64,000 bases of DNA from IMGVR_UViG_3300017917_001342:372001-436000, one strand, 5' to 3'. Positions 1 to 32,995 are shown, counted from the first letter of the stretch. Numbers and translations are program-made. Notes: a model not told the origin generated them from the sequence alone.

Positions 1-345
1 ATTGCTGTAATAGTAATCAACTTCTTCATCATTTACTTTAAATCGTATCAAATGAGGAGTAGTATCAATTGGTACAATTAGTGTGCAACCTCTAGTAAAA
101 TCAGTGTGCCAGCCAGTTTCATGACCAGGTGGTACGTAGCTAAAACTATAGGTGGTAGAATCTAACAGACGATTTTTAATACGTATAGCTTCTATGCTAA
201 CTGGAAACACAATATCTCTATGTGTGCTGAAAAAGGTTTTACCTCTATCAGCAGTGTATTGCGGCCAATGTTTTATATCAGAAATGGTCTCGTATAAAAA
301 TTCTCTGTCATAATCAAGAGTTATCGGATAGATGTAGTCATCCAT
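1..345 (-). CDS. 2OG-Fe(II) oxygenase-like protein (truncated by window edge; absent from ORF track)
   Basis: Manual translation from ATG 345 is open to base 1: MDDYIYPITLDYDREFLYET...YVPPGHETGWHTDFTRGCTLIVPID, with an HxD motif. Overlaps the stop of the upstream gene. Confidence 0.55.
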   Translation of the reverse strand, partial: MDDYIYPITLDYDREFLYETISDIKHWPQYTADRGKTFFSTHRDIVFPVSIEAIRIKNRLLDSTTYSFSYVPPGHETGWHTDFTRGCTLIVPIDTTPHLIRFKVNDEEVDYYYSN

Positions 346-928
346 GTTTCATATTCTTTGTTAATGTTATATCTTCAACGCATTCCGGTGCATCGATTAT
401 CCATTTGATAACAGATGCAACATACTCTGTATTTAATTTAGGTTCATCTGGGTGCAATTTGTCAACGTATGGTGTATGCATATGTCCGAGGCTCATATAT
501 GTACACTTTATGTTAGGCGTTATAGTTGTTCTGTTATGATTGATAGTTTGACACAGTTGCTTTAATGCAATTTTTTCACTGCTGTAGCTTATGTATTTTA
601 ACCAAGGCTGTGCAGTATTAATGTGATCACTAATGCTGCCAATGCATATAACATGTCCAGACTTGTTGCTTTGTTCCCAATCAACATAGAGTTTGTGCAA
701 CAATCTAACTTGACTATAGTTGTTCATTTTTTCAGTATAGCAATTTAAAATCACCACGTCATAATGACATGCAATGTGACAGAATTTATCCATACCTTCG
801 TCAGTAGATAAATCATAGCCATTTGATCTACTAGCAAAACTGCTTTTTAGCAGTGTATTAATTCCAGCAGCAAGGCCGTACGATGGATTACCCGTTGTTA
901 GAATATGTGTTACTGGTTGTCCGGCCAT
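338..928 (-). CDS. Short-chain dehydrogenase/reductase-like protein
   Basis: N-terminal ILTTGNPSYGLAAG Rossmann-like motif, IGS, YSSEK (YxxxK). Paralog of 5398..5961. Confidence 0.7.
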   Translation of the reverse strand: MAGQPVTHILTTGNPSYGLAAGINTLLKSSFASRSNGYDLSTDEGMDKFCHIACHYDVVILNCYTEKMNNYSQVRLLHKLYVDWEQSNKSGHVICIGSISDHINTAQPWLKYISYSSEKIALKQLCQTINHNRTTITPNIKCTYMSLGHMHTPYVDKLHPDEPKLNTEYVASVIKWIIDAPECVEDITLTKNMKHG

Positions 929-1359
929 ATTGATAATCCTAACCTTTGACTAGAAATTTCACTTATATCATGTATTATGTCAACTTGTATACGATGCCAC
1001 GTATGCAGTGGTGCAGTTGCTTCGTAAACTATTTCGGTAGAGTCGTCATTGTACCAGCGAGTTCTCACATTGTCGCCACCAGTTAAAAACAAATAGTTGT
1101 AACAAAATGTTCTACCAACATCGCGATGAGGCGTTAGCTGCACACCGATTAATTGATAGTTTGCTTTGATTTTGAAGCTAAAATGCTGTTGCAAAAAATC
1201 ATGCAACTCGTCGCTTATAGCATGTGTAAAGTACCAATGATCGCCCGACGGATCATCGGAAAACATGTTTTTACCTTTGCGTATAATAGCAGGATCTGTT
1301 ATTGCAAGACCTTCTGGTATTTTTGGTAAATTTGGTTCTATTTGATAATATGGTAACAT
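910..1359 (-). CDS. 2OG-Fe(II)/cupin oxygenase-like protein
   Basis: LTPHRD (HxD) and distal WHRIQVDIIHDI histidine. Confidence 0.5.
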   Translation of the reverse strand: MLPYYQIEPNLPKIPEGLAITDPAIIRKGKNMFSDDPSGDHWYFTHAISDELHDFLQQHFSFKIKANYQLIGVQLTPHRDVGRTFCYNYLFLTGGDNVRTRWYNDDSTEIVYEATAPLHTWHRIQVDIIHDISEISSQRLGLSIWPDNQ

Positions 1360-1362
1360 TTA

Positions 1363-1842
1363 TTATCCTTGTAGTAAACGTTTTCTAGCATACCAACTAA
1401 GAGGCAAATTCAATGTTTTATAATCTTCGCCGGTTACTTTGCCTCTGCACTTGGGTGATCCGCACTTGCAAACTTCTATCGGATTCTTTTTGGTTAAGAA
1501 AAAAGTTCCGTAGTCTACTGTGATGAATTCGCCTTGTTGTATATCGCGCAATGCTCTAAATACAATTTGCCCATCTATATAGCAATTTGGATCACAACTG
1601 TGATTAACATATGCTTCGTATTCACTGCCAGCAGGCAAATCTAATACAAAGTCTTTATCAATCAGCAATCCTTTATACCAAGTGGTTTCTTGGTTGTTTA
1701 TTGCTATGCCGCCTGCAACAAATATCACATCGTCTTTATTAATTACAGAAGTTGCACATCTACACAAACCATGTACTGCACTTTCTTTTACTTCGGTATT
1801 TTTATTAATCCAAAAATAATGCATTAAATTTAGGATCCTCAA
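1363..1842 (-). CDS. SET-domain protein-lysine methyltransferase with post-SET Zn motif (start may be ATG 1824)
   Basis: SAVHGLC, YVNHSCDPNC, ITVDYG and CKCGSPKCRG are canonical SET and post-SET signatures. Confidence 0.85.
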   Translation of the reverse strand: MRILNLMHYFWINKNTEVKESAVHGLCRCATSVINKDDVIFVAGGIAINNQETTWYKGLLIDKDFVLDLPAGSEYEAYVNHSCDPNCYIDGQIVFRALRDIQQGEFITVDYGTFFLTKKNPIEVCKCGSPKCRGKVTGEDYKTLNLPLSWYARKRLLQG

Positions 1843-2575
1843 AGTTTGCTAATACTAGTATGTGGTAACGTGCATCGCCTGCTGTATTATTTACAGCATG
1901 GTTATGTTGTGTGTTTATTATCCATGCTTCATTAAAACCATAATGTTGAACATGCAATGTTTTATCCATGTATACTAACATAGATGCATGTTCAGATGTA
2001 ACCAATGGTATATGTAAGTATGCATGTGTGTATTTAGGTTCGTAATAATTGTGGCTGTGCCAATTGATTCGCTGATTGTTATCAACTCTAGATATCAATA
2101 CCCTATCGCACATTTCCCATGTAACAAACTGTTTTACAATGCTTACAATGTATGGAACTTTGTGATACAGGTCAGTTTTAACAAGATGTTCCGGTGGCAC
2201 TCGCCCGTCTACAATTAAATCTTGTTTACCAATGATTTCCATATAGTCTAGCGTTTCGCCAAAACCAAAATTACTGTCTTCTACAAAATTTCTTAAAAAT
2301 TTTGCACACCAATAGGTACTAATACCAGCGCCTCTACGTCCTTTTACATCGTTGTTGTATCCATGCCACGGTGTTGATTCAACAATGCTTAATTCTTGTT
2401 TAATGAGATCTTGATTAAAATCTAAGTTGTCTGCAACTTTATAGTGCGGCACGTAGAGTAATTTTTTAGCAACAGGTGATTCTGCACGGTCTGATGCACA
2501 GCGTGGACTACATGTGGGATCAAATGCAGGTGCATTTTCAATGTCTAACAAGTTTTTGTGCAAATTCAAGGACAC
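1805..2575 (-). CDS. Aspartyl/asparaginyl beta-hydroxylase-like oxygenase
   Basis: INWHSH...YLHIPL...AWIINTQHNHAVNN...RYHIL double-stranded beta-helix pattern. Start uncertain (GTG). Confidence 0.65.
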   Translation of the reverse strand: MSLNLHKNLLDIENAPAFDPTCSPRCASDRAESPVAKKLLYVPHYKVADNLDFNQDLIKQELSIVESTPWHGYNNDVKGRRGAGISTYWCAKFLRNFVEDSNFGFGETLDYMEIIGKQDLIVDGRVPPEHLVKTDLYHKVPYIVSIVKQFVTWEMCDRVLISRVDNNQRINWHSHNYYEPKYTHAYLHIPLVTSEHASMLVYMDKTLHVQHYGFNEAWIINTQHNHAVNNTAGDARYHILVLANFEDPKFNALFLD

Positions 2576-3107
2576 CGAGTTTCTCCAAATAAGGGTTTTC
2601 TAAATTAGGTAATTCATTCGCCGAATTAAAAATCATGTGTATTCTTGGGCTATGATCACCATTGACAAAATTGTGCAGTTCATGTGTATTTGTCCAATAC
2701 ACTTTACCCAATGGCATTCTAGCAATGTATGCTAAATCTGGAAATACCATGTATGCCATAAGAGAATTTGTTACAACTGGTATATGATATCTAGTATACA
2801 GATCAACATGTGTGCTGTAACATGCACGTTTGTCTAACCACATAAATCTGGCACTAGCTACAGGAAAATCCAAACTGGTTAGTATTTCTTTTATGTAAGT
2901 GCCTTCTAATTCTGGATGGAAGTTAACACATTGTTCTTCTCGTCTGGCTTTACCGTAGTGATCTACGTCACTGTGCCAAGATACATCAGTCGAATACTGC
3001 AAACATATTTGTGTGTTTTCCCATCCAACACGTTCTATGATATCCAATGATTCTGCTACAAATCTATCCGAATCAATGTCGGCAATTTCTTTGAATATGT
3101 TATTCAT
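2538..3107 (-). CDS. AspH-like 2OG-Fe(II) oxygenase (tandem paralog 1)
   Basis: CYSTHVD, RYHIPV, WTNTHELHNFVNG, RIHMIF. Confidence 0.65.
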   Translation of the reverse strand: MNNIFKEIADIDSDRFVAESLDIIERVGWENTQICLQYSTDVSWHSDVDHYGKARREEQCVNFHPELEGTYIKEILTSLDFPVASARFMWLDKRACYSTHVDLYTRYHIPVVTNSLMAYMVFPDLAYIARMPLGKVYWTNTHELHNFVNGDHSPRIHMIFNSANELPNLENPYLEKLGVLEFAQKLVRH

Positions 3108-3652
3108 TTGTACAGATACTCGTTGTCTAAATTCTTAGGTTCGTTTGCGTTGTTGAAAACAATGTGTATTCGATCTTCGAATGTACCATTGACAAAGTTA
3201 TGAAGTTCATGTGTATTTGTCCAATACAGCTTACCCGGATACATTCGTGCAGTTATGTCTTTATCAGGAAAAATCATAAATGTTTGTAATGGTTTAGTAA
3301 TTACAGGTATGTGATATCTAGTGTAGTAGTCCACATGCGTTGTGTAGCAGGTTTTTGCTGGCAGCTTCATTATTCTTGTATGTGCCACTGGAAAATCCAA
3401 GCTTTCCAAATATGTTTTAATGTATGTACCATCTAATGCAGAATGCCATTTAGTGTAGGTATATTCTTCGGAACTTATATGATGTTCCATGTTTGGTATA
3501 CCGTCGTGCCAACTGTTTTCTGTACTGTACTGCAATGCAATTTGATTGCTGTGATATGAAGTGAGTTTTAATATTTCACGCAGTTCACCTAAAATTAAAT
3601 CAACATCAACATCTGATCGCAACTCTTTAAACACATTTTCATTGCTATTCAT
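3104..3652 (-). CDS. AspH-like 2OG-Fe(II) oxygenase (tandem paralog 2)
   Basis: CYTTHVD, RYHIPV, WTNTHELHNFVNG (identical block to neighbour), RIHIVF. Confidence 0.65.
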   Translation of the reverse strand: MNSNENVFKELRSDVDVDLILGELREILKLTSYHSNQIALQYSTENSWHDGIPNMEHHISSEEYTYTKWHSALDGTYIKTYLESLDFPVAHTRIMKLPAKTCYTTHVDYYTRYHIPVITKPLQTFMIFPDKDITARMYPGKLYWTNTHELHNFVNGTFEDRIHIVFNNANEPKNLDNEYLYK

Positions 3653-4284
3653 AATCTACCAAATCCCCAAAATCTTTCTTCACACCACCAACATTTTCCA
3701 CAATGCCCCATTCCCGGGTCATCCCATTCATGGTTGATCCATTCACAACTTCTTGTAACAGTAAACAGGTCATCCATTAGGTTGTACTGTTTATATATAG
3801 CACATAAATCTTGTTTATCTAAATTTGTCCACGGCATATACCAATTGCCTTGTTTAGGTTGCCGTATTACTGTTGGATCGCGTTCGTGGTTTTCTAATGT
3901 TTCTAATGTGAATTTTTCAATTACATCAAATGGAGGATTTTTTGTTACACCGGTGTAAACCGTTGATACAATGTTGTTATCAAGAAATTCCATTGGTACT
4001 AGAAATAAATTCTGTTTTGTTTGCGCAGTGACATATGAAATGTGATGCGTTAAATTGTAATTCTTAGTTAACTCAGTGCATCTACTAATAACATTAACAG
4101 CAGCATGTGTATTTCTAATCAGTTTTTCTTGACTGGCTACAGAAAAAACATGCAGTGGTTGATCCGAATATTTTAACAGAAAATACAGCATCAGTGCGCT
4201 GTCTGCACCTCCACTCACACACACTCCCAGGTTACCAGGATATACGTTAAATTCCACATTGTTTGTTATAGAATATGTTTTCAT
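3649..4284 (-). CDS. QueC-like PP-loop ATPase
   Basis: VSGGADS PP-loop and C-terminal TRSCE...HCGKCWWCEER Zn motif. Confidence 0.75.
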   Translation of the reverse strand: MKTYSITNNVEFNVYPGNLGVCVSGGADSALMLYFLLKYSDQPLHVFSVASQEKLIRNTHAAVNVISRCTELTKNYNLTHHISYVTAQTKQNLFLVPMEFLDNNIVSTVYTGVTKNPPFDVIEKFTLETLENHERDPTVIRQPKQGNWYMPWTNLDKQDLCAIYKQYNLMDDLFTVTRSCEWINHEWDDPGMGHCGKCWWCEERFWGFGRL

Positions 4285-5420
4285 TTCGGTTTATATTTTG
4301 GTATTTTACTGTCAGCACTGCTAACACATGCATTAGTGATGCAAGGCATCGGAGTATCAAATAGTTTAAATCCAGTTTCTATGTACCCTAGAGGTTTATC
4401 GCAACAACTGTAGCTGCGTTTAATTGCACCATCTGGTTCTCTTATTATAATGCTTCTGTAACCACTTTCACAATTCCAGCCGTTAAACTGATTGAAATTA
4501 AAGGCATTAAATCGTTCAGCCTGATCCATATACCATTTTTTACCTGTGTTGTCTTCAAATTCAACTTGCATTAATTGTGGTACTGATGCATCGTCACCGT
4601 TTGATACACTCATAGTCTGCATACTGATTTTTGGCTTAGGCCTATTGACTTTGCTTTTGACCGCAGTGAAATCTCGTTGCGGCATACCATTGTGTAATAC
4701 TGCTAACTGCTCTGTAGTATACCCTTCCACTATCCGGCTTGCTGTAGGGTCGCTTTGAGCCTTCAGCGTGACGTTTATTCCTCGACTCAAGAAGTATTCT
4801 GTTTCTTTATACAGTACATCAAACCATTCTGGTACCATAACAGTGTTGATGGTTACCTGAACATCGTTTTCTTGTAGATAAACCAGTTTGTCTGCAAACT
4901 TCTCAGTATGCCCAACTAAGTCACCTTGTTTTATACCTTGTTCGCGATGCCAACTGGCAGTGACACTTACTCTGTGCAAATTGCGTGTTACATCTACATA
5001 TTTTTCGAACCAATTGAGACTTTGGCTTATGTTACTGGTCATATGCACACTTTGATAATTGCAATTATCAGTATCGGTTGCGTAGTGATTGAGAAGTTTC
5101 AAGTAGTCAGGATATACTGTAGGTTCGCCGCCGCTAAAACTAAAATGAAAACTGTTAAAACCACGTTCTCTACTTTGTCGTTTTATTTCATCAATTGTCA
5201 TACGATTTAATTCATATGGACGATAATCTTTTACATCACTTCGTGCATATGGCCAACAGTAACTACAGCGATAGTTGCAATAACGCCCTAACAGCCAGCT
5301 TACACAAAATATATCTCTATAGAGAAGGGTTCGTTGACCGAATTTAACTATGTCATTAAACGGTATTTTAGTGAAATCGTATTGACTCCATTCTACCTTA
5401 TTCTTTATACCATCTGTCAT
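4281..5420 (-). CDS. Radical SAM protein with C-terminal Cys-rich (twitch-like) region
   Basis: CNYRCSYC (CxxxCxxC), SGGEPT, and C-terminal CESG...SCC...C...C. Confidence 0.9.
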   Translation of the reverse strand: MTDGIKNKVEWSQYDFTKIPFNDIVKFGQRTLLYRDIFCVSWLLGRYCNYRCSYCWPYARSDVKDYRPYELNRMTIDEIKRQSRERGFNSFHFSFSGGEPTVYPDYLKLLNHYATDTDNCNYQSVHMTSNISQSLNWFEKYVDVTRNLHRVSVTASWHREQGIKQGDLVGHTEKFADKLVYLQENDVQVTINTVMVPEWFDVLYKETEYFLSRGINVTLKAQSDPTASRIVEGYTTEQLAVLHNGMPQRDFTAVKSKVNRPKPKISMQTMSVSNGDDASVPQLMQVEFEDNTGKKWYMDQAERFNAFNFNQFNGWNCESGYRSIIIREPDGAIKRSYSCCDKPLGYIETGFKLFDTPMPCITNACVSSADSKIPKYKPK

Positions 5421-5961
5421 CTTGCATCGGATCTATACTAATTTCATTAATGTTAATATGCTTCGGTTGATCTATTAACCATTTAATATAATGTGCAGCA
5501 GTGATAATGTCTAGACATTTACGATCCGGATGCTTAGATTGATTGTTTGTCAGTGTACCAAAACTGACATAACTGATTTTAGGATAAGTTGACCAAACAC
5601 TGCCTATTGATAGTGTATTACAATAATCCCTAAGTGCTTTCTTTTCTGCATTGTATAACCAAGGCTTGCTGTTGTTAACTTTATCAGTTGTGCTACCAAT
5701 ACAGATAATGTGCATCGTTGGATTTTTTTCAACTGCAACTTTAAATACTGCATCGAGTAATACTGTTTGATTGAATTTCCATAGTGCTGCACAATTTACA
5801 AACACATCATGCCCTGCTGCAATCAATGCAGCACGTTCTTGGTCGTCCTTTTTAGCTAGATCAAATCCAGATGACCTACTTAAAAATGTTGCATTGGGAA
5901 ATATACTTGCTATTTCTTTTGCCAAGCCGTAGTTGGGATTACCTGTAATACATACTCTCAT
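5398..5961 (-). CDS. Short-chain dehydrogenase/reductase-like protein
   Basis: RVCITGNPNYGLAKE, FVNCA, IGS, YNAEK (YxxxK). Confidence 0.7.
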   Translation of the reverse strand: MRVCITGNPNYGLAKEIASIFPNATFLSRSSGFDLAKKDDQERAALIAAGHDVFVNCAALWKFNQTVLLDAVFKVAVEKNPTMHIICIGSTTDKVNNSKPWLYNAEKKALRDYCNTLSIGSVWSTYPKISYVSFGTLTNNQSKHPDRKCLDIITAAHYIKWLIDQPKHININEISIDPMQDDRWYKE

Positions 5962-6680
5962 AATTTACCAAATGCATATAAACGTTCTAAGCAAAAGTAA
6001 CAGACACCGCAATGTGTCGGTGTGTCGGTATACATTTGCATATGATTTTCGCAAGACCAAGTAATGGGATAAAGGTCCTCAAGTAAGTTGTAATAGTTGT
6101 ACAGTTTAAAAACTGTTCGTTTATCAGAACGTGCAAAAGGCATGTAATAGGTTACATTGCCTAATTTTCCCACAGTTGAATACAACGGATAAGTTCTATT
6201 AACATCTCTTTCTGACAGCCATTTTTTGCATTCAACTTTATCATATTTGAAGTTGTCAGATTCAACCATTGCTTGAAGTTCATCTATCGGACAATTAATT
6301 GACAACCCGGTATAATTAGAATCAATTGAATGATTTTCTATAACCTCATGTTCCAAGTTATCTTGACCTATTGTGTATTCTTGTGAATTTGATTCAACTG
6401 AATTGTCGATGCGATGATTTAAATTACACGATTCGTAATGTTTAGCCGGATATTTTCCAGTTAATTTTCCAACTAACTCAATAACACCTTTGGCTTTGTT
6501 TACAGAATGTGGTCGTAATGCAGTATTCAATGTATAAGGGTATATGTTAACATCTGTGTAGTCTTTAAAAAAATTGCACAATGCATAATAAATGATACTG
6601 CTGTCTGGTCCCCCAGATAATCTTACTGCGATGTTTTTATCCAAAGGATCTACAGATATAACGTCGTCAATCATCGTCAT
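5958..6680 (-). CDS. QueC-like PP-loop ATPase
   Basis: LSGGPDS and TWSCE...HCGVCYFCLER. Confidence 0.75.
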   Translation of the reverse strand: MTMIDDVISVDPLDKNIAVRLSGGPDSSIIYYALCNFFKDYTDVNIYPYTLNTALRPHSVNKAKGVIELVGKLTGKYPAKHYESCNLNHRIDNSVESNSQEYTIGQDNLEHEVIENHSIDSNYTGLSINCPIDELQAMVESDNFKYDKVECKKWLSERDVNRTYPLYSTVGKLGNVTYYMPFARSDKRTVFKLYNYYNLLEDLYPITWSCENHMQMYTDTPTHCGVCYFCLERLYAFGKL

Positions 6681-8884: not shown

Positions 8885-8889
8885 ATATT

Positions 8890-10035
8890 TTAATTATTCC
8901 AAGCTTTTAAAAAATTGCACAGTTCTAAATTGTAATCTTCTAATCTAGTATTATAATACCCATCCAGTTTTTTAGTGTAATATAAAAAATCTGACCAATG
9001 TTTTTCATTGTAGCTGTTTACATTCAAAAATGTAGATATAAGTCTATGTGCAGTTTCATTGTGTTTGTTTTTATCTAAGACCCATTGCACATAATCTTCT
9101 GGTGCATACAACAGTGATAGATGATAAGGATACCTAACAAAATCAACAGACATATGATATCCATGTTGTTCCATTAATACGTTTACTGTATTAGCAAGTG
9201 TGTTTGCATTTAACAGTGATACCACAGTGTGGAATGATGTCTGTACATTTTGAAAAATAGTTTCGTACATTTTAGTGTTGTTAAAAGTGTCTATATAAGA
9301 ACTACCGTAGCGTTGATAATCATTAGATAGATCAAATGCATCTAGACTCACGTGTATGTCTAGCATTTTAAATTTATTGAGTTTTTCTATGACTGCATAT
9401 GATGGTATAACTGTGCCATTGGTTGCAATTTCTATAGTTATCTGTGTTGGATCGGAGCGTTCTATTAGATAGTCAATGAACTTTACAAAGTTGGGAGTCA
9501 TAAAAGGTTCGCCGCCTAAAATTTTAACAAGTTCTAAATTGGATAGATCAGTGTTGTTAAATTTGCGAAAATTAGGTTCCAACTTTTTAAAAACTTCTTC
9601 ACCTAGAAACTCGTCTCTGTTCATCAATCGAGTGCTAAATTTACTGTCGCACATTTTACATTGTAAATTACAGATATTGTCTATAGACATTTCAATGTAT
9701 CGCAGTTTTTCAAACTGTGTAGTGCAATTGTTTTTATCTACGTGAGAAAATCTACCATTGATATATGTTCTAAGAGACGTTGCTGTACCGTCACCTTCTT
9801 GATCATAACATTTAGTACATCCAGGTGATTTTATACCCATTAACATATTCTGCCTTAAGGCAACCATGTTGGGAGTTTCCATTACAGCTAACCCCTGTTG
9901 TTCTAACTGGTCGAGTGTAATGTCTATGCGTGTTTCATCCTTTGGGTTTTGAAATCTACAACAGGGTTTTAAGCTGTTATCTGGTCGTACACATTGATGT
10001 ATCCACGGCAATACGCACCATGTATCATTGTTCAT
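8890..10035 (-). CDS. Radical SAM protein with N-terminal Cys-rich domain
   Basis: WCVLPW...PCC, CTKC, CNLQCKMC, ILGGEP, TNGT. Paralog of 14177..15523. Confidence 0.9.
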   Translation of the reverse strand: MNNDTWCVLPWIHQCVRPDNSLKPCCRFQNPKDETRIDITLDQLEQQGLAVMETPNMVALRQNMLMGIKSPGCTKCYDQEGDGTATSLRTYINGRFSHVDKNNCTTQFEKLRYIEMSIDNICNLQCKMCDSKFSTRLMNRDEFLGEEVFKKLEPNFRKFNNTDLSNLELVKILGGEPFMTPNFVKFIDYLIERSDPTQITIEIATNGTVIPSYAVIEKLNKFKMLDIHVSLDAFDLSNDYQRYGSSYIDTFNNTKMYETIFQNVQTSFHTVVSLLNANTLANTVNVLMEQHGYHMSVDFVRYPYHLSLLYAPEDYVQWVLDKNKHNETAHRLISTFLNVNSYNEKHWSDFLYYTKKLDGYYNTRLEDYNLELCNFLKAWNN

Positions 10036-11165
10036 TTTGGTATCTCATCTCTATCAATATCAATAGAACCGAATCCAATAATAGACTTTTTGAATTCTCT
10101 AGACACATCTGGTAGTTTGTTGTCTGTTAAAAACCAAGACGAACTGTGCCACCTGGCAGTGTCAAACACCATCATTGTGCCTAGCTGCCATTCGTATACG
10201 CTGTGTGTTTTTAAACAAGCATATTCTTTGTAATACTGTGTGTTTGGTGGATTGTATTGCATTACATCAGAATCATACCACCAATCACGTTCATCGTCTG
10301 GTCTATATTTGAAAACTTCGTCGTTGTCCATGTATCGCATTTCACCTTTGCGATAAATCAACTTACGTGGCACAGTGCTGACACGGTCATAGTTTACAGT
10401 ATATGGCTGATGACACGACCACATTAACGGTATAATAACACCCATAACAATATGGCAATCATGTGTTATCAAATTATTATCTACTACTCGCCATGTGTTT
10501 GGTAATGAAACATAATCGGTGTGCAACCCCGCAGGCTCACCAGATTTAAAATATTCAAAATTCCAATCTAACTTAACGTTAAGGTAATTGTTTATATACG
10601 TAGAGAGATAGGTTTTAGTATCAGCCGGTGTAGACACAAATCTATTGTGTCCCTTAGATCCACTTATTTTAACAGTTTGTGATTCTAACAAACTGTTAGA
10701 TTCTAAATTATATTTGTAAATGTCCAAATCAATTTTATTACTGCCATAGCGTATTACGTTGTTTTTTAGTGCCACGCACTGTTTAACTTCATCTAATTTT
10801 ATAAAATTGAGATTTTTTACAGCTTGTTTGATTACAGATGCATAAATGGTATGACGTATATTCCTAGCAATTAACACACCAGAATCCGACAGATACTGTC
10901 TAATGTGTTTATACAATGCATGCCAGTTGACATGTTCTTCTGTGACACCAATTGTTATAATATCATATTTGAATTCGCTGTTAAATGACAATGCCGTTGG
11001 TGCATAAATCTCACTGTAGGCCCATTCTGGAAATTGTGTTTTTGTAAAATCTATTAGCTGTCCATCTGCTTCACCTATTTCCAAAATACGTCCATGTTGG
11101 CCAAATGTAGACATTTGTTGTGCCACTAATTGCATTTCTTCAGGATATATTAGACTTTTGCCCAT
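10032..11165 (-). CDS. Methyltransferase-like / 2OG-Fe(II) oxygenase fusion
   Basis: N-terminal ILEIGEADG aligns with 12088..12642. C-terminal LHTD...MMVFDTARWHSS aligns with 8153..8884. Confidence 0.6.
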   Translation of the reverse strand: MGKSLIYPEEMQLVAQQMSTFGQHGRILEIGEADGQLIDFTKTQFPEWAYSEIYAPTALSFNSEFKYDIITIGVTEEHVNWHALYKHIRQYLSDSGVLIARNIRHTIYASVIKQAVKNLNFIKLDEVKQCVALKNNVIRYGSNKIDLDIYKYNLESNSLLESQTVKISGSKGHNRFVSTPADTKTYLSTYINNYLNVKLDWNFEYFKSGEPAGLHTDYVSLPNTWRVVDNNLITHDCHIVMGVIIPLMWSCHQPYTVNYDRVSTVPRKLIYRKGEMRYMDNDEVFKYRPDDERDWWYDSDVMQYNPPNTQYYKEYACLKTHSVYEWQLGTMMVFDTARWHSSSWFLTDNKLPDVSREFKKSIIGFGSIDIDRDEIPK

Positions 11166-12091
11166 TATTTTCGTTCTTCTTTTTCTATAGAATTAAGACC
11201 AGCGTCGGTACCTCTTGCATCAAACACGCCTTCAATGAGATATCGTAAAGGAGTGCGTATGCCGTATTGCACAGTATTATGACCTTGAGTCTTAAAGCCG
11301 ACATGTATACTGTTGCCTTCTGTTAATCCAAAATCATTGCAGACTTTGCTGTACAACTCACTATAGTTAGACCACCAATAATCTACACCAAAATGATTCA
11401 TCATTTCTACACCTATCCACATGTCACTGACATTGCAATAGTCAAAATCATTCATAATAGCTATTGGACCGTTTACTCGTTCCCTGGTATATCTGATACC
11501 AATACGCTGACTACCCATTCCCAGTGCTTTGCTGAGACTAACACTAACACTTGCGATAGCAGGATGAGACACATCAAATTCAAAATTTCTGCATTGTCCA
11601 AACCATGCACCATCAATATGAACTGGAATATTTCTATGCTCACAGTGATCTAAAAGTAGATCGAAATCATCCAAATGTCCTGTTGTAATGCAGCTTGGAT
11701 AGCTTGCAACAAATACATCACCTGGTACTAATTCAGTGAAATGTTCTATCTGCTTAACGGTAAAATCTGTTAAGCGTCTATGATACTTGTATTCGCCTTG
11801 CATAGTGGCTATACGACCGTTATGCAGCATGTGTAGTTCATCTAGTTGATGCGTAGTACCTAATATTGCGTCACGGCGTGTAAACGTGTCTAATCCGCTA
11901 TAATGAACCAGTTTGTGTGCATTGATCCACTTGTCAATACTAGCAATGAAATGTCTGGTGTATTCGTGTGGATCTTTTGGATATGTAGACATATCAAGAC
12001 CGGCCCGAAATTTAGTAAACTTGCTAAGATACATCGGGCGCTGTCTCTTAGTACCTAGCATTTCAAATGTAATGTCGTCATAAGTCATCAT
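11165..12091 (-). CDS. PLP-dependent (aminotransferase class I/II fold) enzyme
   Basis: HIDGAW (DxA) and SVSLSKALGMGSQRIG (SxSK...G.RIG PLP-lysine motif). Confidence 0.7.
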   Translation of the reverse strand: MMTYDDITFEMLGTKRQRPMYLSKFTKFRAGLDMSTYPKDPHEYTRHFIASIDKWINAHKLVHYSGLDTFTRRDAILGTTHQLDELHMLHNGRIATMQGEYKYHRRLTDFTVKQIEHFTELVPGDVFVASYPSCITTGHLDDFDLLLDHCEHRNIPVHIDGAWFGQCRNFEFDVSHPAIASVSVSLSKALGMGSQRIGIRYTRERVNGPIAIMNDFDYCNVSDMWIGVEMMNHFGVDYWWSNYSELYSKVCNDFGLTEGNSIHVGFKTQGHNTVQYGIRTPLRYLIEGVFDARGTDAGLNSIEKEERK

Positions 12092-12642
12092 TTGTTTCCA
12101 TATGCATAGGACCCATTAACAGATTCTATACTTTTAAAATTTAATGCATTCACAGCTTGATTTATATATTCACCGTAGATTTTGTGTTTTAAATTTCTAG
12201 CGATAATAACACCGTCATTTTTTAACATAGTTGCTGCATGTTGATATACTGTAACCCAATTGATTTTTTTACTAACAAGTCCCATACTGATAACATCAAA
12301 TTTTTGATCAGTGTTCCAATTTTCAAAATATGCTTCTTGTGCAATTGCAAATGGACAATTTTTTGTAAACATATCCTTAGTAATCACATCGCTTAGGTTA
12401 TTAGGAGCAAAATAATCTGCGGCCCAATCTATTTGTAATCTGACTTTTTCCTGTTCCCAGGGATCAACTGCAACGTATGTCCATAGTGGGAATCGTTTAT
12501 GTAAAAAATCAAACAGTCTGCCAGCAGCCGCACCAACTTCTAATATAGATCCTACTTTGCCTTTCGACTCCATTTGTCTAGCAACTAATTCCATTTCAGC
12601 TACGGAGATCCAACCATCTACCATGTTATATCCACTTTTCAA
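12088..12642 (-). CDS. Class I SAM-dependent methyltransferase
   Basis: ILEVGAAAG motif I, YVAVDPW, KFDVI, LKNDGVII. Confidence 0.75.
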   Translation of the reverse strand: MKSGYNMVDGWISVAEMELVARQMESKGKVGSILEVGAAAGRLFDFLHKRFPLWTYVAVDPWEQEKVRLQIDWAADYFAPNNLSDVITKDMFTKNCPFAIAQEAYFENWNTDQKFDVISMGLVSKKINWVTVYQHAATMLKNDGVIIARNLKHKIYGEYINQAVNALNFKSIESVNGSYAYGNK

Positions 12643-13522
12643 CTATTGCATCTAACTTACACGGGCATGCAGAATAATCACACACAATTGGATCAGTTGG
12701 TAATGTATATTGACCTGTTAAAATATTACCTAAACTGCCACCGACATTTTTAGTACAACGCTTTATATTGCCGTTTGGTTCAACCATTAAACGCTTAATA
12801 CCAGCAGTACAAGTATATCCCTTAAATTGATGAAGTCCTTGATCAAGTACATTCATGAACTTTATCTTTTTACCATCGAAATGCAAATTCCTAGGTATTT
12901 CCCAATCTATACCAAACGGTTTCATTTTATTATGATGATTAGTTTGTATCCATTGTCGTTGTTCATCTGTATATTCAAAATAAGAAGTGCCGTTAATACT
13001 GGTTCGAGTAAATTTAGGGGTACACTCTATATCAAGAGTTGTTAGTCTATCATAGAGTTTTTTAGCACGTTCAAAATTGTCAGGTACTACCATAAGTGGT
13101 ACACTTAAACTGGCTTTGTGTTGCATTATATCAGCTACTGCATAAAAATGATCGTCGTCTGCAAATTCATGATGCCAGCTTAAAAACACAAATGCTCGCT
13201 GTGTCTTAAATTGAGTCCAATAGTTTATTGTGCGAGATGCGTTGGTAGCGTATTCTACAAAAACATTATCGTCACTAATTGTATCCACAAATTCTTGGAA
13301 CCTAGGCCATACTGTAGGTTCGCCGCCCAAAACTTCTATATACAAATAACGATTTCGTTGTTTAAGTTCAGTTATTAATTTAATATAAGGAGTCCAATCG
13401 TCTGGCCATCTGTAAGATCCCGATCTATGATAATCGTTGCAATATGAACAACTGTAATTACATACGTTATGTATGAACAGTGTTAAAACACAGCAATTTA
13501 AATTTTCATTTGTGATATGCAT
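12626..13522 (-). CDS. Radical SAM protein (SPASM/twitch-like C-terminus)
   Basis: CNYSCSYC, LGGEPT, TNAS, CTAG...VEPNGNIKRC...CDYSACPC. Confidence 0.9.
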   Translation of the reverse strand: MHITNENLNCCVLTLFIHNVCNYSCSYCNDYHRSGSYRWPDDWTPYIKLITELKQRNRYLYIEVLGGEPTVWPRFQEFVDTISDDNVFVEYATNASRTINYWTQFKTQRAFVFLSWHHEFADDDHFYAVADIMQHKASLSVPLMVVPDNFERAKKLYDRLTTLDIECTPKFTRTSINGTSYFEYTDEQRQWIQTNHHNKMKPFGIDWEIPRNLHFDGKKIKFMNVLDQGLHQFKGYTCTAGIKRLMVEPNGNIKRCTKNVGGSLGNILTGQYTLPTDPIVCDYSACPCKLDAIVEKWI

Positions 13523-13524
13523 GT

Positions 13525-14199
13525 TTATTTTATATGAACAAGATCGTTGTCAACCCACATAGATTTATGTCTATACATTGCCGTGTTGATTTTAACATCG
13601 TAGTTGTGGGGTATGGTTTCAATAGGGTATCCGATTCCTAGAGCAGTTACAACTCTATCATCAATTAATTCTTTGTCGTATTCTTCTTTTAATAATCTGT
13701 ACAATATAGATCTAAAATTGTCATCAAAACATGTACAAAACCCAGTACGATACCCAAGTTGATTAGCTGCTAATGCCAGCATGCCCATGTGTATCCCAAC
13801 TGACGTATGCATATCTTCTGATATAAATCTGTACGAAGTTTTTTCTCTGTTTTCGTTATTAAAATTTGTAGCAACTGTTTCTTCATAATGCTGGGATTTG
13901 TATTCACTGTACGGTAATGCAATTACCAATAACGGTGCAGACATTTGTGCATTATGCGGAGAATGATACCCGTGATCTCTCGACGACATGTACATATCAT
14001 GTATCAGTTCTCTATTTTCAATAAACAGTGTTTTATGCCAAACCACACCTTGCTTCCTAGGTGCAAATTCTATCAGTGTTTTAAATAACTCAACATCATC
14101 AGGTTTAACCGACTTATCGTCAAAATTACGTTGACATAATCTTGCATAATTAATAGAAGATACTAATAGATTTTTATCAATTATCATTAAACAATTCAC
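13525..14199 (-). CDS. Nitroreductase-fold flavoprotein
   Basis: RLCQRNFDDKSV, FAPRK, GMLALAANQLGYRTGFC, ALGIGYP. Confidence 0.7.
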   Translation of the reverse strand: MNCLMIIDKNLLVSSINYARLCQRNFDDKSVKPDDVELFKTLIEFAPRKQGVVWHKTLFIENRELIHDMYMSSRDHGYHSPHNAQMSAPLLVIALPYSEYKSQHYEETVATNFNNENREKTSYRFISEDMHTSVGIHMGMLALAANQLGYRTGFCTCFDDNFRSILYRLLKEEYDKELIDDRVVTALGIGYPIETIPHNYDVKINTAMYRHKSMWVDNDLVHIK

Positions 14200-15523
14200 G
14201 ATATTGCGGTATTATATCTAATACATTTTGGTTTCTAATTTTGTCTAGATCTTTAGTAATTTTAACAAATTGCGGTAACCATTCAGCAGAATAATCTTCG
14301 CTTAACATAAACTTTTCTACACTATCTAAGTGTTTGACAAAGTGCTTTTTAACATGTGTCGAAAAGTTAGTTGCAACTATCCAGGCTTTATATTGCTTGT
14401 AATGTTCTACTACCTGCTGCTTGATGTCAGCTGGTAATACTTTAATGTTATAGTATTTTGGGCTATGACACATATGATAAGAAACAATAGGTCTATATGA
14501 TTCAACTGGATTGAATTTTAACAGATTGCTTTCTGTTAATTTCCATTTCATGAATTCAGGAAAATGGAAAACATTAAACGGTGTTATAGTAAATGCAAAC
14601 CAGCACTTGAGATTAATATCGGTTCTTGCATCTATCTTTTTTAGATTTTCATAGACATGAGTCCATTTTGCCGGAGCCCGCTGATAATCAAATATTTCGT
14701 TGCAGGCATCTATACTTGCACCTATGCGTATTTCTTTAAAATGCTTCCACAGGTCTAATATTTTATCTGTAACGTTAGTGAGATTTGTGTTGTATTCAAT
14801 TTGAATCTCACTTGCTCTACCGTTGGCTACCAGTCGTTCTAACGATTCTATATGCTCATCAATTATAAGAGGCTCACCACCTACAATGTAAAGCTTCTTG
14901 GCATTTTTAGTATGCTGCTCAAAATTACTCCAATACATGTTGGAATTCTTAAACCAATCATATTGATCAGTTGTCCATCGACCTTTTTCATTTTTTACTA
15001 GTTGTACTCGTTCATGAGTGTCTTTGTACGATGTAGATCCCCATAGCTTTACAAAGTCATCATACCATTGATGACTATCTGTAGGACCACACATTCTACA
15101 TTTCAAATTGCAGAAGTTACCGTAGCGTATATCAAAATATTCAATATCTTGTTTAGCAGTATCTATAGTACCGTCAGCTTCAGTAATAGATGCAGCATAC
15201 TCTTTTGTTATCTCCCAATCGTTAAGTTCCATCTGTCGTCGAGATAATACGCCATTTTTTTCTTCTTGTCTGCAACGTTCGCATTCAGAATGCCACTCGT
15301 TGTTAAGCATAGTTGATCTGACGTCTTTTAGTAATGCAGCATTTCTAGCATCGTTGAAATCATCTTTGCTTGCATTGTAAGCAGTGCCATCTGATTTACG
15401 AATTATACCTTTATTAGGACTGTATGAGTTTGCATTACAACAAACTCTAAGATCGCCATTGTTACGTATGTTTATGCTGTTCCATGGTAATGGACAAAAT
15501 GTGCTTTTAGATTCTTCAGACAC
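14177..15523 (-). CDS. Radical SAM protein with N-terminal Cys-rich domain
   Basis: FCPLPW...RVCC, CERC, CNLKCRMC, IVGGEP, YNTN. Confidence 0.9.
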   Translation of the reverse strand: MSEESKSTFCPLPWNSINIRNNGDLRVCCNANSYSPNKGIIRKSDGTAYNASKDDFNDARNAALLKDVRSTMLNNEWHSECERCRQEEKNGVLSRRQMELNDWEITKEYAASITEADGTIDTAKQDIEYFDIRYGNFCNLKCRMCGPTDSHQWYDDFVKLWGSTSYKDTHERVQLVKNEKGRWTTDQYDWFKNSNMYWSNFEQHTKNAKKLYIVGGEPLIIDEHIESLERLVANGRASEIQIEYNTNLTNVTDKILDLWKHFKEIRIGASIDACNEIFDYQRAPAKWTHVYENLKKIDARTDINLKCWFAFTITPFNVFHFPEFMKWKLTESNLLKFNPVESYRPIVSYHMCHSPKYYNIKVLPADIKQQVVEHYKQYKAWIVATNFSTHVKKHFVKHLDSVEKFMLSEDYSAEWLPQFVKITKDLDKIRNQNVLDIIPQYRELFNDN

Positions 15524-15597
15524 TGCAAAGACCTTAAACTAATGTATCACAATAGTTTAAAGCCTTTGTAGAGTATTTTGTATAAACAACTGTCAAT

Positions 15598-15624
15598 AAA
15601 AAACCGGGACAAGCCCGGTTTTTT
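15598..15624 (-). terminator. Intrinsic (bidirectional) terminator after tail sheath gene
   Basis: AAAAAACCGGG-ACAAG-CCCGGTTTTTT perfect stem with T-tracts on both strands. Confidence 0.85.
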
Positions 15625-15628
15625 AATC

Positions 15629-19663: not shown

Positions 19664-19696
19664 ATGTCAAATCCTTTGATTTGTTGTGTGCTGGTT

Positions 19697-19703
19697 TATT
19701 TAG
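19697..19703 (-). promoter_or_regulatory. T4-like late promoter CTAAATA (sheath)
   Basis: 34 nt upstream of sheath ATG. The same motif recurs before most structural genes. Confidence 0.65.
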
Positions 19704-19758
19704 CGGTTGCCAGCAAAAAACCACGTCTTGAAACGTTTGTAATAGCGTTATTAACAGT

Positions 19759-26684: not shown

Positions 26685-26687
26685 ATA
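26680..26687 (+). promoter_or_regulatory. Late promoter TATAAATA (full T4 consensus)
   Basis: Immediately upstream of in-frame ATG 26695. Confidence 0.6.
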
Positions 26688-26694
26688 TGTCATC

Positions 26695-32969: not shown

Positions 32970-32987
32970 TGCATTTCTCCTGTGTGA

Positions 32988-32995
32988 TATTTATA
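32988..32995 (-). promoter_or_regulatory. Late promoter TATAAATA
   Basis: Just downstream of the gp23 terminator and 19 nt upstream of ATG 32969. Confidence 0.65.

What the first reader, a model, noticed from the sequence alone, without database searches (positions are those of the whole stretch)
1..15523. At least 20-gene phage biosynthetic super-operon (radical SAM / 2OG oxygenase / QueC-like / SET / PLP / nitroreductase) of unknown product
Seen: 20 contiguous, mostly overlapping minus-strand genes, all with recognisable tailoring-enzyme motifs and no structural or replication gene. The operon continues past the window edge. Known: phage hypermodification pathways need hallmark genes (QueD/QueE/FolE/DpdA for deazaguanine; 5-hmU kinase plus amino-acid:DNA transferase; TET/JBP). 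None is recognisable in this window. Inference: an uncharacterised pathway with the size of a natural-product cluster. It could heavily modify phage DNA or nucleotides, protein targets (SET and AspH-like enzymes point to proteins), or make a small molecule or cofactor.
Basis: partly seen in the sequence, partly recalled or inferred. Interest (0 to 1): 0.88.

Follow-up and report, generated by a model that had tools for sequence, protein, structure and literature searches.

The report
Phage radical-SAM sugar-tailoring gene island
A giant T4-like phage carries a tightly packed 34-gene enzyme island, rich in radical-SAM and oxygenase genes, whose core is shared with predatory Bdellovibrio-type bacteria and most likely builds or decorates an unusual sugar or glycan by a pathway nobody has described.

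Summary
Window 1-15523 carries 19 complete and 1 edge-cut minus-strand genes, mostly overlapping. They encode 5 radical SAM enzymes, 4 AspH-like and 2 further HxD..H cupins, 2 QueC-like PP-loop ATPases, 2 short SDRs, a SET domain, a PLP enzyme and a nitroreductase-fold flavoprotein. The window lies in a 518,643-bp viral contig. The run continues for 6 more genes, 26 in all. It then meets a convergent 8-gene operon of nucleotide-sugar type. The island lies between the terminase region and the tail sheath.

The radical-SAM half recurs in at least 139 viral loci. Unexpectedly, it also recurs in Bdellovibrionota chromosomes, in arrays of up to 12 radical SAM genes. Four orthogroups are shared at 45% identity or more. 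In Bdellovibrio these genes overlap nucleotide-sugar dehydrogenase, epimerase and DegT genes and sit among GT2 glycosyltransferases. The phage operon ends with a predicted GT-B glycosyltransferase.

Best reading (about 0.45): a new radical-SAM-heavy sugar or glycan tailoring pathway, acceptor unknown. Rivals are protein or RiPP modification, a sugar-derived small molecule, and non-glycan DNA modification. No deazaguanine hallmark genes were found.

The parts
1..345 (-). First 115 codons of a 255-aa AspH-like cupin. The gene starts at 345 and continues beyond the left window edge.
   Evidence: Translation. Full gene is L048:10584-11351, PF05118 at 23.2 bits against a 22.6 cut-off.
338..928 (-). 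Short SDR-like oxidoreductase (196 aa, YxxxK present). One of three paralogues in the operon.
   Evidence: Weak adh_short hit. phmmer 2e-28 to 5398-5961. About 40% identical homologues in Bdellovibrionota loci.
910..1359 (-). 149-aa protein of unknown family.
   Evidence: No Pfam, PHROG or NCBIfam hit. Shared only with L049-L051.
1363..1842 (-). SET-domain methyltransferase (159 aa) with NHSC and post-SET Cys motifs.
   Evidence: PF00856 at 47 bits against a 22.4 cut-off. Motifs read. Found in only 4 phage loci and no genome locus.
1805..2575 (-). AspH-like (PF05118) cupin oxygenase.
   Evidence: 27.7 bits against a 22.6 cut-off. Two His invariant across paralogues.
2538..3107 (-). AspH-like cupin, tandem paralogue.
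   Evidence: PF05118 at 18.6 bits, below cut-off. Local family HMM 3.7e-48.
3104..3652 (-). AspH-like cupin, tandem paralogue of 2538-3107.
   Evidence: phmmer 1e-59 to 2538-3107.
3649..4284 (-). PP-loop ATPase with SGGADS and a QueC-type C-terminal Cys motif.
   Evidence: PP-loop, Asn_synthase and QueC hits are weak. phrog_1550 at 5e-7. Below the QueC cut-off.
4281..5420 (-). Radical SAM enzyme, orthogroup B. 55-68% identical to Bdellovibrionota proteins.
   Evidence: PF04055 at 48 bits. tblastn. Tree. No homologue in GenBank phages.
5398..5961 (-). Short SDR-like oxidoreductase (187 aa).
   Evidence: About 40% identical homologues in 11 genome loci.
5958..6680 (-). Second PP-loop ATPase (SGGPDS) with QueC-type C-terminus.
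   Evidence: PF06508 at 24.1 bits against a 22 cut-off, C-terminal part only. phmmer 1e-19 to 3649-4284.
6667..8160 (-). Cobalamin-binding (class B) radical SAM enzyme, a probable C- or P-methyltransferase type.
   Evidence: PF02310 at 37 bits and PF04055 at 65 bits. Best subfamilies are PhpK and the RiPP C-methyltransferase, far below their cut-offs.
8153..8884 (-). Cupin-like protein with invariant HxD..H..K, a probable Fe/2OG oxygenase.
   Evidence: No library hit. Invariant H88, D90, H210 and K220 in 21 homologues. Marginal DfmD hit.
8890..10035 (-). N-terminal-twitch radical SAM enzyme (NF033640).
   Evidence: 246 bits against a 170 cut-off.
10032..11165 (-). Fusion: N-terminal methyltransferase-like domain (paralogue of 12088-12642) and C-terminal HxD cupin (related to 8153-8884).
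   Evidence: The C-terminal part is conserved as a roughly 250-aa protein in 14 loci.
11165..12091 (-). Fold-type-I PLP enzyme of the class I/II aminotransferase kind (HisC/CobD-like).
   Evidence: Model pLDDT 91.8. Foldseek hits HisC and CobD at 1e-9, TM about 0.5. Invariant D160, K188 and R196. Homologues in 20 phage and 14 genome loci.
12088..12642 (-). Class I SAM-methyltransferase-like protein (184 aa).
   Evidence: Methyltransf_23 at 28.8 bits against a 27 cut-off.
12626..13522 (-). Radical SAM enzyme, STM4011-like.
   Evidence: PF04055 at 34.5 bits. NF038073 at 52 bits, below cut-off. phrog_13987 at 1e-18.
13525..14199 (-). Nitroreductase-fold flavoprotein. Possibly the reductant for the Fe-S enzymes (inference).
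   Evidence: Weak alone. Family profile hits YdfN at 4.6e-8 and BluB-like at 4e-5.
14177..15523 (-). N-terminal-twitch radical SAM enzyme, orthogroup C. First gene of the operon.
   Evidence: NF033640 at 367 bits against a 170 cut-off. 60-88% identical in 32 of 47 viral loci. 29-45% (one locus 63%) in 73 genome loci, mostly Bdellovibrionota.
15524..15628 (-). Intergenic region. A 12-bp-stem bidirectional terminator hairpin (15597-15625) follows the sheath stop, then a TTGACA box and an AAGG ribosome site before the GTG start.
28311..31383 (+). Three glycosyltransferase genes (Mannosyl_trans3, Glyco_transf_92, GT1/GT4) inside the structural module. Possibly linked to the island as transferases; the link is not shown.
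   Evidence: Precomputed Pfam hits. The one tested, the Glyco_transf_92 gene, has no homologue in GenBank phages.

Best explanation
The region is the larger part of a 34-gene, roughly 25.5-kb biosynthetic island (contig 361,990-387,523). It lies between the packaging genes and the tail sheath of an uncultured T4-like jumbo phage.

I read it as a carbohydrate-tailoring pathway. Inferred scheme:
- The convergent operon (NDP-sugar dehydrogenase, epimerase/dehydratase, cupin isomerase, PLP enzyme, GNAT) makes an activated amino or uronic sugar.
- The 26-gene operon then remodels it. The radical SAM enzymes would carry out C-H chemistry: two N-terminal-twitch, one cobalamin-dependent, two others.
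- Fe/2OG-type cupins would hydroxylate.
- The QueC-like PP-loop ATPases would activate or amidate carboxylates.
- A HisC/CobD-like PLP enzyme, short SDRs and methyltransferases complete the tailoring.
- The nitroreductase-fold flavoprotein and a redoxin would supply electrons.
- The GT-B transferase at the 3' end, and perhaps the three transferases at 28-31 kb, would put the product on an acceptor.

The acceptor is unknown. My order of preference is a virion protein, then the host envelope, then glycosylated DNA.

Shown: gene content, operon structure, and homology and synteny with Bdellovibrionota sugar loci. Inferred: substrate, reaction order and acceptor.
For: (1) Anatomy. 26 co-directional, mostly overlapping genes meet 8 convergent genes.

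(2) Sugar genes in the island.
- A nucleotide-sugar dehydrogenase: TIGR03026 at 129 bits, with both UDPG_MGDP_dh domains.
- An NAD epimerase/dehydratase at 110 bits.
- A cupin with Polysacc_synt_C and dTDP_sugar_isom hits.
- A GNAT.
- x13977 models at pLDDT 86.5. All but one of its top 43 Foldseek PDB hits are GT-B glycosyltransferases or the same-fold UDP-GlcNAc 2-epimerases. They include exostosin, BshA, T4 BGT and AGT, and the alpha1,3-fucosyltransferase.

(3) Bdellovibrio sp. HCB2-146. An N-twitch radical SAM gene overlaps UDPG-dehydrogenase, then epimerase, then DegT. A homologue of the PLP enzyme shares an operon with an epimerase and a UDPG-dehydrogenase. Other arrays are interleaved with GT2, PMT_2 and GNAT genes.

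(4) Census.
- 30 of 74 genome loci and 49 of 139 phage loci carry a recognisable sugar-type gene.
- There are 57 radical-SAM/sugar-gene pairs on one strand with a gap of 60 nt or less.
- A NodU/CmcH-type carbamoyltransferase occurs in 36 phage loci.

(5) Natural fusions of the N-twitch enzyme to an FkbM methyltransferase, and weakly to an Stf0 sulfotransferase.

(6) Three glycosyltransferases elsewhere in the window.
Against: - No glycosyltransferase was recognised by sequence in any of the 55 phage loci first surveyed. GT2 was found in 0 of 55.
- The x13977 fold matches are weak (best E 4.5e-4, TM 0.27-0.43).
- The PLP enzymes are HisC/CobD-like, not the DegT type usual for sugars.
- SET and five or six AspH-like genes are classically protein-directed.
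- The nearest solved relatives of the N-twitch enzymes by sequence are RiPP maturases: 8VPO, a radical SAM cyclopropyl synthase, and SkfB.
- No nucleotidyltransferase, flippase, polymerase or exporter was found.
- Only about 40% of the Bdellovibrionota loci show sugar genes, and glycan genes and variable islands may simply co-locate.
Confidence: 0.45

Rival explanations
1. Protein or peptide modification. The radical SAM, AspH-like, SET and cobalamin-methylase enzymes post-translationally modify a ribosomal product. That product would be either a RiPP-like precursor encoded elsewhere or a large structural protein such as the 1344-aa sheath or tail fibres, for example to harden it against proteases.
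For: - The closest solved relatives by profile are RiPP maturases (8VPO at 2e-15, SkfB at 2e-11).
- SET and AspH families are typically protein-directed.
- The cobalamin radical SAM gene hits the RiPP C-methyltransferase and MCR glutamine C-methyltransferase subfamilies.
- The arrays lie directly downstream of the sheath (window, L002, L003, L028, L128) or of tail-fibre genes (L022).
- A Bdellovibrio array adjoins a 1959-aa Peptidase_S74 fibre protein.
- A very conserved 74-aa protein accompanies the arrays in 69 phage loci.
Against: - There is no short ORF or intergenic space for a precursor in the operon.
- The 74-aa protein is absent from the window and from Bdellovibrionota loci.
- No PqqD/RRE, leader peptidase or exporter family appeared in any scan.
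- Identity of 45-68% between phage and bacterial orthologues suggests an invariant substrate.
- PLP, SDR, NDP-sugar and transferase genes are not explained.
Confidence: 0.2
2. A diffusible, sugar- or amino-acid-derived small molecule made during infection. It could be an aminoglycoside- or nucleoside-like antibiotic, or a cofactor, as proposed for cyanophage clusters.
For: - The enzyme palette matches aminoglycoside and nucleoside antibiotic tailoring: twitch radical SAM enzymes like BtrN and BlsE, a cobalamin radical SAM methylase, a carbamoyltransferase, SDR, PLP and GNAT.
- Iyer et al. 2021 (PMC7824862) proposed either capsule decoration or a secondary metabolite for a cyanophage cluster with carbamoyltransferases and cupin or 2OG oxygenases.
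Against: - There is no scaffold-forming enzyme (cyclitol synthase, NRPS or PKS), no resistance gene and no exporter.
- Phylum-wide, mostly vertical inheritance in Bdellovibrionota, next to GT2 and PMT_2 genes, looks more like a cell-surface trait.
Confidence: 0.15
3. Non-glycan hypermodification of phage DNA or nucleotides, for example a deazapurine or an amino-acid-derived base modification.
For: - QueC-like PP-loop enzymes with the QueC C-terminal motif.
- Weak QueE-like hits for radical SAM genes.
- Radical SAM and PLP enzymes occur in known thymidine hypermodification pathways (my knowledge).
- A dNMP kinase lies next to the sheath gene.
Against: - QueC scores reach 19 bits against a 150 cut-off.
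- No FolE, QueD, true QueE or DpdA appears in the 34 island genes, the window, or the 9 kb beyond the island.
- The same genes are chromosomal and vertically inherited in Bdellovibrionota, among envelope-type genes.
Confidence: 0.08
4. No single product. The island is a hypervariable 'moron' region holding unrelated enzyme cassettes that merely share a transcription direction.
For: The two halves have different distributions. The radical SAM half is in dozens of loci. The AspH/SET half is in only 3 other contigs. Gene order and content vary widely among loci.
Against: - Start and stop codons overlap across nearly all 26 genes.
- The same families recur together in phages and in bacteria: radical SAM, PP-loop, PLP, SDR and AspH-like.
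- In contigs L050/L198 and L051/L199 the AspH/SET half is again contiguous with a radical SAM array.
Confidence: 0.07

Closest known systems
Uncharacterised radical-SAM arrays in Bdellovibrionota chromosomes (for example Bdellovibrio sp. HCB2-146, JBLEQP010000001, around 1.85-1.90 Mb)
   Same: True homologues. Four radical SAM orthogroups are shared at 45% identity or more (w4281 at 55-68%). The PLP enzyme, PP-loop ATPases, short SDR, cobalamin radical SAM and AspH-like genes are shared too. Arrays reach 12 radical SAM genes.
   Different: The bacterial arrays are interleaved with GT2, PMT_2, DegT and full-length UDPG-dehydrogenase genes. They lack SET and the 74-aa protein. I found no publication describing them.
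Cyanophage 'second gene cluster' of sugar- and amino-acid-modifying enzymes (Iyer et al. 2021, PMC7824862)
   Same: A phage-borne cluster with carbamoyltransferases, 2OG and cupin hydroxylases and methyltransferases. It was proposed to decorate a polysaccharide or to make a metabolite.
   Different: That cluster has 8-12 genes, and radical SAM is not mentioned anywhere in the paper. Here there are 34 genes built around 5 radical SAM enzymes, up to 12 in relatives.
Sugar-tailoring radical SAM enzymes of aminoglycoside and nucleoside antibiotic pathways (BtrN, BlsE, GenK-type)
   Same: A twitch auxiliary-cluster domain: the N-terminal residues 5-77 of the family profile align to the BtrN twitch, and BlsE is among the profile hits. 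The cobalamin radical SAM methylase architecture also matches.
   Different: Here the twitch domain is N-terminal to the core rather than C-terminal. Scores are far below any equivalog cut-off. No enzyme for the aminoglycoside or nucleoside scaffold is present.
RiPP radical SAM-SPASM maturases (8VPO cyclopropyl synthase, SkfB)
   Same: Best sequence-profile matches among solved structures.
   Different: No precursor peptide, RRE, peptidase or exporter in the island. The auxiliary-cluster domain is N-terminal.
Phage glycosylation systems (T4 hmC glucosyltransferases; mycobacteriophage virion glycosylation, as cited in PMC12619734)
   Same: Phage-encoded transferases. The x13977 model matches T4 BGT (probability 0.99, TM 0.42) and AGT, among other GT-B enzymes. 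Three more transferases lie inside the structural module.
   Different: Known systems use host nucleotide sugars and one to a few transferases. None has a multi-radical-SAM tailoring operon.

Membership tests
Radical SAM superfamily | CX3CX2C cluster motif and a PF04055 score above gathering | tested here: met
   Five genes score 34.5-65 bits against a 29.5 cut-off. The motif is present in all five (read).
NF033640 N-terminal-twitch radical SAM | Score above the curated cut-off, and four conserved Cys N-terminal to the core | tested here: met
   367 and 246 bits against a 170 cut-off. C10, C28, C81 and C84 are invariant in 23 paralogues. Pfam SPASM is called N-terminal to the core in fused relatives.
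Cobalamin-dependent (class B) radical SAM methyltransferase | B12-binding domain followed by a radical SAM core | tested here: met
   PF02310 at 37.3 bits (cut-off 32.1) and PF04055 at 65 bits.
Cobalamin-dependent (class B) radical SAM methyltransferase | Assignment to a named subfamily (PhpK, RiPP C-methyltransferase and others) | tested here: not met
   Best is 95 bits against a 600 cut-off.
7-deazaguanine (queuosine / Dpd) pathway | True QueC | tested here: not met
   TIGR00364 at 19 bits against 150. Only the C-terminal Zn motif and the PP-loop match.
7-deazaguanine (queuosine / Dpd) pathway | FolE, QueD, QueE and DpdA nearby | tested here: not met
   None among the 34 island genes, the rest of the window, or the 9 kb beyond the island. 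The rest of the 518-kb genome was not seen.
Thymidine hypermodification (5-hmU kinase plus amino-acid:DNA transferase) | The kinase and transferase genes | tested here: inconclusive
   No hit was named as such in Pfam, PHROGs or NCBIfam, but these families may lack models in the libraries used.
RiPP biosynthetic cluster | Precursor peptide gene in or next to the cluster | tested here: not met
   No free short ORF or intergenic space. The 74-aa protein of other loci is absent from the window.
RiPP biosynthetic cluster | RRE/PqqD domain, leader peptidase, exporter | tested here: not met
   No such family appears in any scan of the island.
Nucleotide-sugar / glycan gene cluster | NDP-sugar dehydrogenase and epimerase/dehydratase | tested here: met
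   Both are in the convergent operon just outside the window: TIGR03026 at 129 bits, PF01370 at 110 bits. The dehydrogenase lacks the C-terminal domain (265 aa).
Nucleotide-sugar / glycan gene cluster | Glycosyltransferase | tested here: inconclusive
   x13977 has no sequence hit. Its model (pLDDT 86.5) matches GT-B enzymes only weakly: E 4.5e-4 to 1e-2, TM up to 0.43. Three clear transferases lie 13 kb away.
Nucleotide-sugar / glycan gene cluster | Sugar nucleotidyltransferase, flippase, polymerase or exporter | tested here: not met
   None was detected in the island or the window.
AspH / PF05118 hydroxylases | Score above gathering and the two metal-binding His | tested here: met
   Met for 1805-2575 (27.7 bits), x10584 (23.2) and y17135 (33.6). 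2538-3107 is below cut-off (18.6). H173 and H226 are invariant.
AspH / PF05118 hydroxylases | Protein (Asp/Asn) substrate | not testable with these tools
   Family members also act on lipid A (LpxO; my knowledge), so the substrate class cannot be read from the fold.
SET-domain lysine methyltransferase | SET domain above gathering, with NHSC and post-SET motifs | tested here: met
   47 bits against a 22.4 cut-off. Motifs are visible. The substrate was not tested.
Fold-type-I PLP enzyme, class I/II aminotransferase | Fold, Schiff-base Lys and pyridine-N Asp | tested here: met
   The sequence profile gives only weak aminotransferase hits (E 0.06).
Nitroreductase-fold flavoprotein | Profile similarity to solved members | tested here: met
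   YdfN (3bem) at 4.6e-8, plus more than 30 further nitroreductase-fold chains. The single sequence is below Pfam gathering.

The most novel reading that the evidence does not exclude
The arrays encode an ancient, undescribed multi-radical-SAM pathway. It has at least 4 conserved radical SAM orthogroups and up to 12 radical SAM genes per locus. Two kinds of bacterial predators share it: Bdellovibrionota and large aquatic phages. It would make a radically remodelled surface glycan or glycoconjugate, on fibres, the sheath or the envelope, that matters for contact with prey. The N-terminal-twitch family would then be a large new class of carbohydrate-modifying radical SAM enzymes, with about 4,200 clusters at 50% identity.
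Probability: 0.3. Interest if true: 0.85.

Novelty: new variant of a known kind. Interest (0 to 1): 0.72.

Why it matters
- Radical SAM enzymes that act on sugars are few and prized for their chemistry. An array of 5-12 of them in one pathway has, to my knowledge, no precedent.
- The family is large: 4,218 representative clusters at E <= 1e-30. It is abundant in aquatic viromes, yet it has only two distant (23% identity) matches among 50,697 GenBank phage records and no literature that I could find. That makes it a sizeable blind spot.
- The link to Bdellovibrionota gives a culturable, genetically tractable organism in which to find the product.
- If the product decorates virions or predator fibres, it bears on how phages and predatory bacteria recognise prey or evade its defences.
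- If it is a small molecule, it is a new natural-product class.

Tried and rejected
- Megablast of the region against GenBank phages found nothing.
- tblastn against GenBank phages: N-twitch found two distant hits; w4281 and the GT92 gene found none.
- Single-sequence PDB searches were uninformative.
It was redone with a narrower alignment.
- The exact T4 late-promoter motif TATAAATA is not enriched: 3 found against 7.4 expected.
- The sigma-70 scan is at background: 78 found against 88 expected.
- I searched for a precursor peptide. The only conserved small ORF (74 aa) is absent from the window and is conserved along its whole length, unlike a leader-core peptide.
- Families u239 and u241, which flank the arrays in other loci, gave no Pfam or PDB hit. 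hhalign of u239 against GT2 gave only P = 9e-4.
- Literature searches for Bdellovibrio or jumbo-phage radical SAM arrays found nothing relevant.
- I considered whether the phage infects Bdellovibrionota. The orthogroup-B tree shows a few deep phage clades rather than recent exchange, so this is left open.

Full report
**Observation.** The window is part of IMGVR_UViG_3300017917_001342, a 518,643-bp viral contig. Contig coordinate equals window coordinate plus 372,000.
- From 15523 down to 338 there are 19 complete minus-strand ORFs. A twentieth starts at 345 and leaves the window.
- Fourteen of the 19 junctions overlap, one abuts, and the other four gaps are at most 6 nt.
- GC content is 33-37%, against 38-43% in the neighbouring structural genes.

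**Family assignments**:
- Five radical SAM genes, all with CX3CX2C. One has a cobalamin-binding domain. Two are full-length members of NCBIfam NF033640, the twitch-domain radical SAM family, at 367 and 246 bits against a 170 cut-off. One is STM4011-like.
- One SET domain.
- Three AspH-like cupins, plus the edge-cut gene.
- Two PP-loop ATPases with a QueC-type C-terminus.
- Two short SDR-like proteins.
- Two methyltransferase-like domains.
- A nitroreductase-fold protein, confirmed by a family profile against PDB at 4.6e-8.
- 11165-12091 had no library hit. It is a fold-type-I PLP enzyme: pLDDT 91.8, nearest folds HisC and CobD, with the Lys and Asp invariant.
- 8153-8884 and the C-terminal half of 10032-11165 share an invariant HxD..H..K pattern typical of Fe/2OG oxygenases.
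- 910-1359 remains unassigned.

**Beyond the window.** Two loci from the same contig (L048, L216) show the rest.
- The run continues for six genes: the AspH-like gene, an unknown, a weak AspH-like relative, two proteins with an N-terminal GDS-type motif (my reading), a 365-aa protein and a third short SDR.
- The 365-aa protein (x13977) models well (pLDDT 86.5). Its PDB neighbours are almost all GT-B glycosyltransferases, though weakly.
- The run then meets a convergent eight-gene operon. It encodes a fatty-acid-desaturase-like protein, an NAD epimerase/dehydratase and a nucleotide-sugar dehydrogenase. It also encodes a paralogue of the PLP enzyme, an AspH-like cupin, a redoxin, a cupin sugar isomerase and a GNAT.
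- Further left lie unrelated genes on the other strand, ending with the large terminase.
- The island is therefore 34 genes and about 25.5 kb. It is bounded by packaging genes on one side and the tail sheath on the other.

**Surroundings.** The rest of the window is a T4-like structural module. It holds gp13, gp15, a 1344-aa sheath, the gp23 capsid protein, the prohead protease, the portal and baseplate genes.
- Three glycosyltransferase genes lie at 28311-31383.
- The nearest cultured phages by sheath are Atu_ph07, Phosso and PA5oct, at 44-51% identity.
- A strong bidirectional terminator hairpin (15597-15625) separates the sheath gene from the operon. A TTGACA box follows it.
- Structural genes carry an nTAAATA motif upstream. 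The operon does not (my reading). It is therefore probably its own, non-late transcription unit. This is an inference.

**Relatives in viruses.**
- The first gene has 60-88% identical orthologues in 32 of 47 viral loci recovered, and more than 1,600 database relatives, all unnamed.
- In those loci it sits in arrays of up to 10-12 radical SAM genes, together with PP-loop, PLP, cupin and methyltransferase-like genes.
- Over all 216 loci held, including the window, 1,013 of 3,683 ORFs are radical SAM genes.
- The AspH/SET half is shared with only three other contigs. There it is again contiguous with a radical SAM array.
- GenBank phages lack the system.

**Relatives in cells.**
- One scan of 185,579 species genomes returned 73 loci, overwhelmingly Bdellovibrionota. 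They include complete chromosomes and the isolate Bdellovibrio sp. HCB2-146.
- The same partner families co-occur there.
- Four radical SAM orthogroups are shared between phages and these bacteria at 45% identity or more. The window has two of them.
- The tree of orthogroup B largely follows bacterial taxonomy, with a few deep phage clades: 4 label changes against 18 expected by shuffling.
- A few 'MAG' contigs from other phyla look like mis-binned phage.

**What the bacterial context says.**
- In HCB2-146, an N-twitch radical SAM gene overlaps a UDPG-type dehydrogenase, an epimerase and a DegT aminotransferase in turn. The PLP homologue shares an operon with an epimerase and a dehydrogenase.
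- Other arrays are interleaved with GT2, PMT_2, GNAT and FAD-oxidoreductase genes. One adjoins a 1959-aa Peptidase_S74 fibre protein.
- A recognisable sugar-type gene occurs in 30 of 74 genome loci and 49 of 139 phage loci. There are 57 tightly linked radical-SAM/sugar-gene pairs.
- A NodU/CmcH-like carbamoyltransferase occurs in 36 phage loci.
- Natural fusions join the N-twitch enzyme to further radical SAM copies, TPR repeats, an FkbM methyltransferase and, weakly, an Stf0 sulfotransferase.

**Interpretation.** The best-supported reading is carbohydrate tailoring. A nucleotide-sugar module feeds a set of radical SAM, Fe/2OG, PP-loop, PLP, SDR and methyltransferase enzymes. A transferase delivers the product.
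- The evidence is contextual, not biochemical. I put it at about 0.45.
- The acceptor is open. Placement next to sheath or fibre genes, and the transferases inside the structural module, favour virion proteins. The host envelope or glycosylated DNA remain possible.
- Points against: the PLP enzymes are amino-acid-type; SET and AspH are classically protein-directed; the nearest solved radical SAM relatives are RiPP maturases; and no sequence-recognisable transferase sits inside the phage arrays.
- The protein or RiPP rival therefore keeps 0.2, a sugar-derived small molecule 0.15, non-glycan DNA modification 0.08, and 'no common product' 0.07.

**Comparison and novelty.**
- The closest described system is the cyanophage sugar and amino-acid-modification cluster of Iyer et al. 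2021. It has no radical SAM genes.
- The true homologues, the Bdellovibrionota arrays, appear undescribed.
- I file this as a new variant of a known kind, namely phage-borne glycan or metabolite clusters.
- There is roughly a 0.3 chance that it represents a new multi-radical-SAM pathway common to bacterial predators.

Noticed in passing
window 15597-15625: A perfect 12-bp GC-rich hairpin flanked by A and T runs on both strands. It is a bidirectional terminator between the sheath gene and the operon, followed on the minus strand by TTGACA.
   Followed up: partly
window 15629-19663: The tail sheath is 1344 aa, about twice the usual length. Only the N- and C-terminal parts match PA5oct-type sheaths (49% coverage), so it carries a large central insertion.
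   Followed up: no
window 28311-31383: Three consecutive glycosyltransferase genes (Mannosyl_trans3, Glyco_transf_92, GT1/GT4) lie inside the T4-like structural module. The one tested, the Glyco_transf_92 gene, has no homologue in GenBank phages.
   Followed up: partly
window, upstream of structural genes (e.g. 19664-19720, 32970-33000, 40487-40548, 48780-48822): An nTAAATA motif lies 20-45 nt before many structural-gene starts, like a degenerate T4 late promoter. It is absent before the radical SAM operon (my reading, not tested statistically).
   Followed up: partly
window 59888-64000 and beyond: An ORF that runs off the right edge encodes a 3,673-aa protein downstream of the baseplate genes.
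   Followed up: no
window 26617-27447: A PolyA_pol-family nucleotidyltransferase (CCA-adding type) lies among the tail genes.
   Followed up: no
L126:6146-6370 and 68 other phage loci: A 74-aa protein is conserved along its whole length and always sits between family u241 and radical SAM orthogroup D. It is absent from Bdellovibrionota loci and from the window.
   Followed up: partly
L126:4532-5248 (u239) and L126:5245-6159 (u241): Two very common array-flanking families have no Pfam or PDB match. u241 has a methyltransferase-like glycine motif (my reading). u239 also forms the N-terminus of 530-920-aa proteins, and in one Bdellovibrionota locus a GT2 gene takes its place.
   Followed up: partly
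L052, L065, L075, L115: Contigs binned into Verrucomicrobiales, Rickettsiales, Neisseriaceae and Crocinitomicaceae MAGs carry phage-type arrays. L052 has a 63% identical orthologue, and the other three carry the 74-aa gene. They are probably mis-binned phage DNA.
   Followed up: no
P0139, P0140, P0142, P0186, P0251: Natural fusions of the N-twitch radical SAM enzyme to one or two further radical SAM domains, to TPR repeats, or to an FkbM methyltransferase.
   Followed up: partly
L216:9237-10004 (contig about 361,990-362,757): A fatty-acid-desaturase-like gene heads the convergent sugar operon. A FA_hydroxylase gene sits next to the homologous Bdellovibrio operon. A lipid link was not explored.
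   Followed up: no
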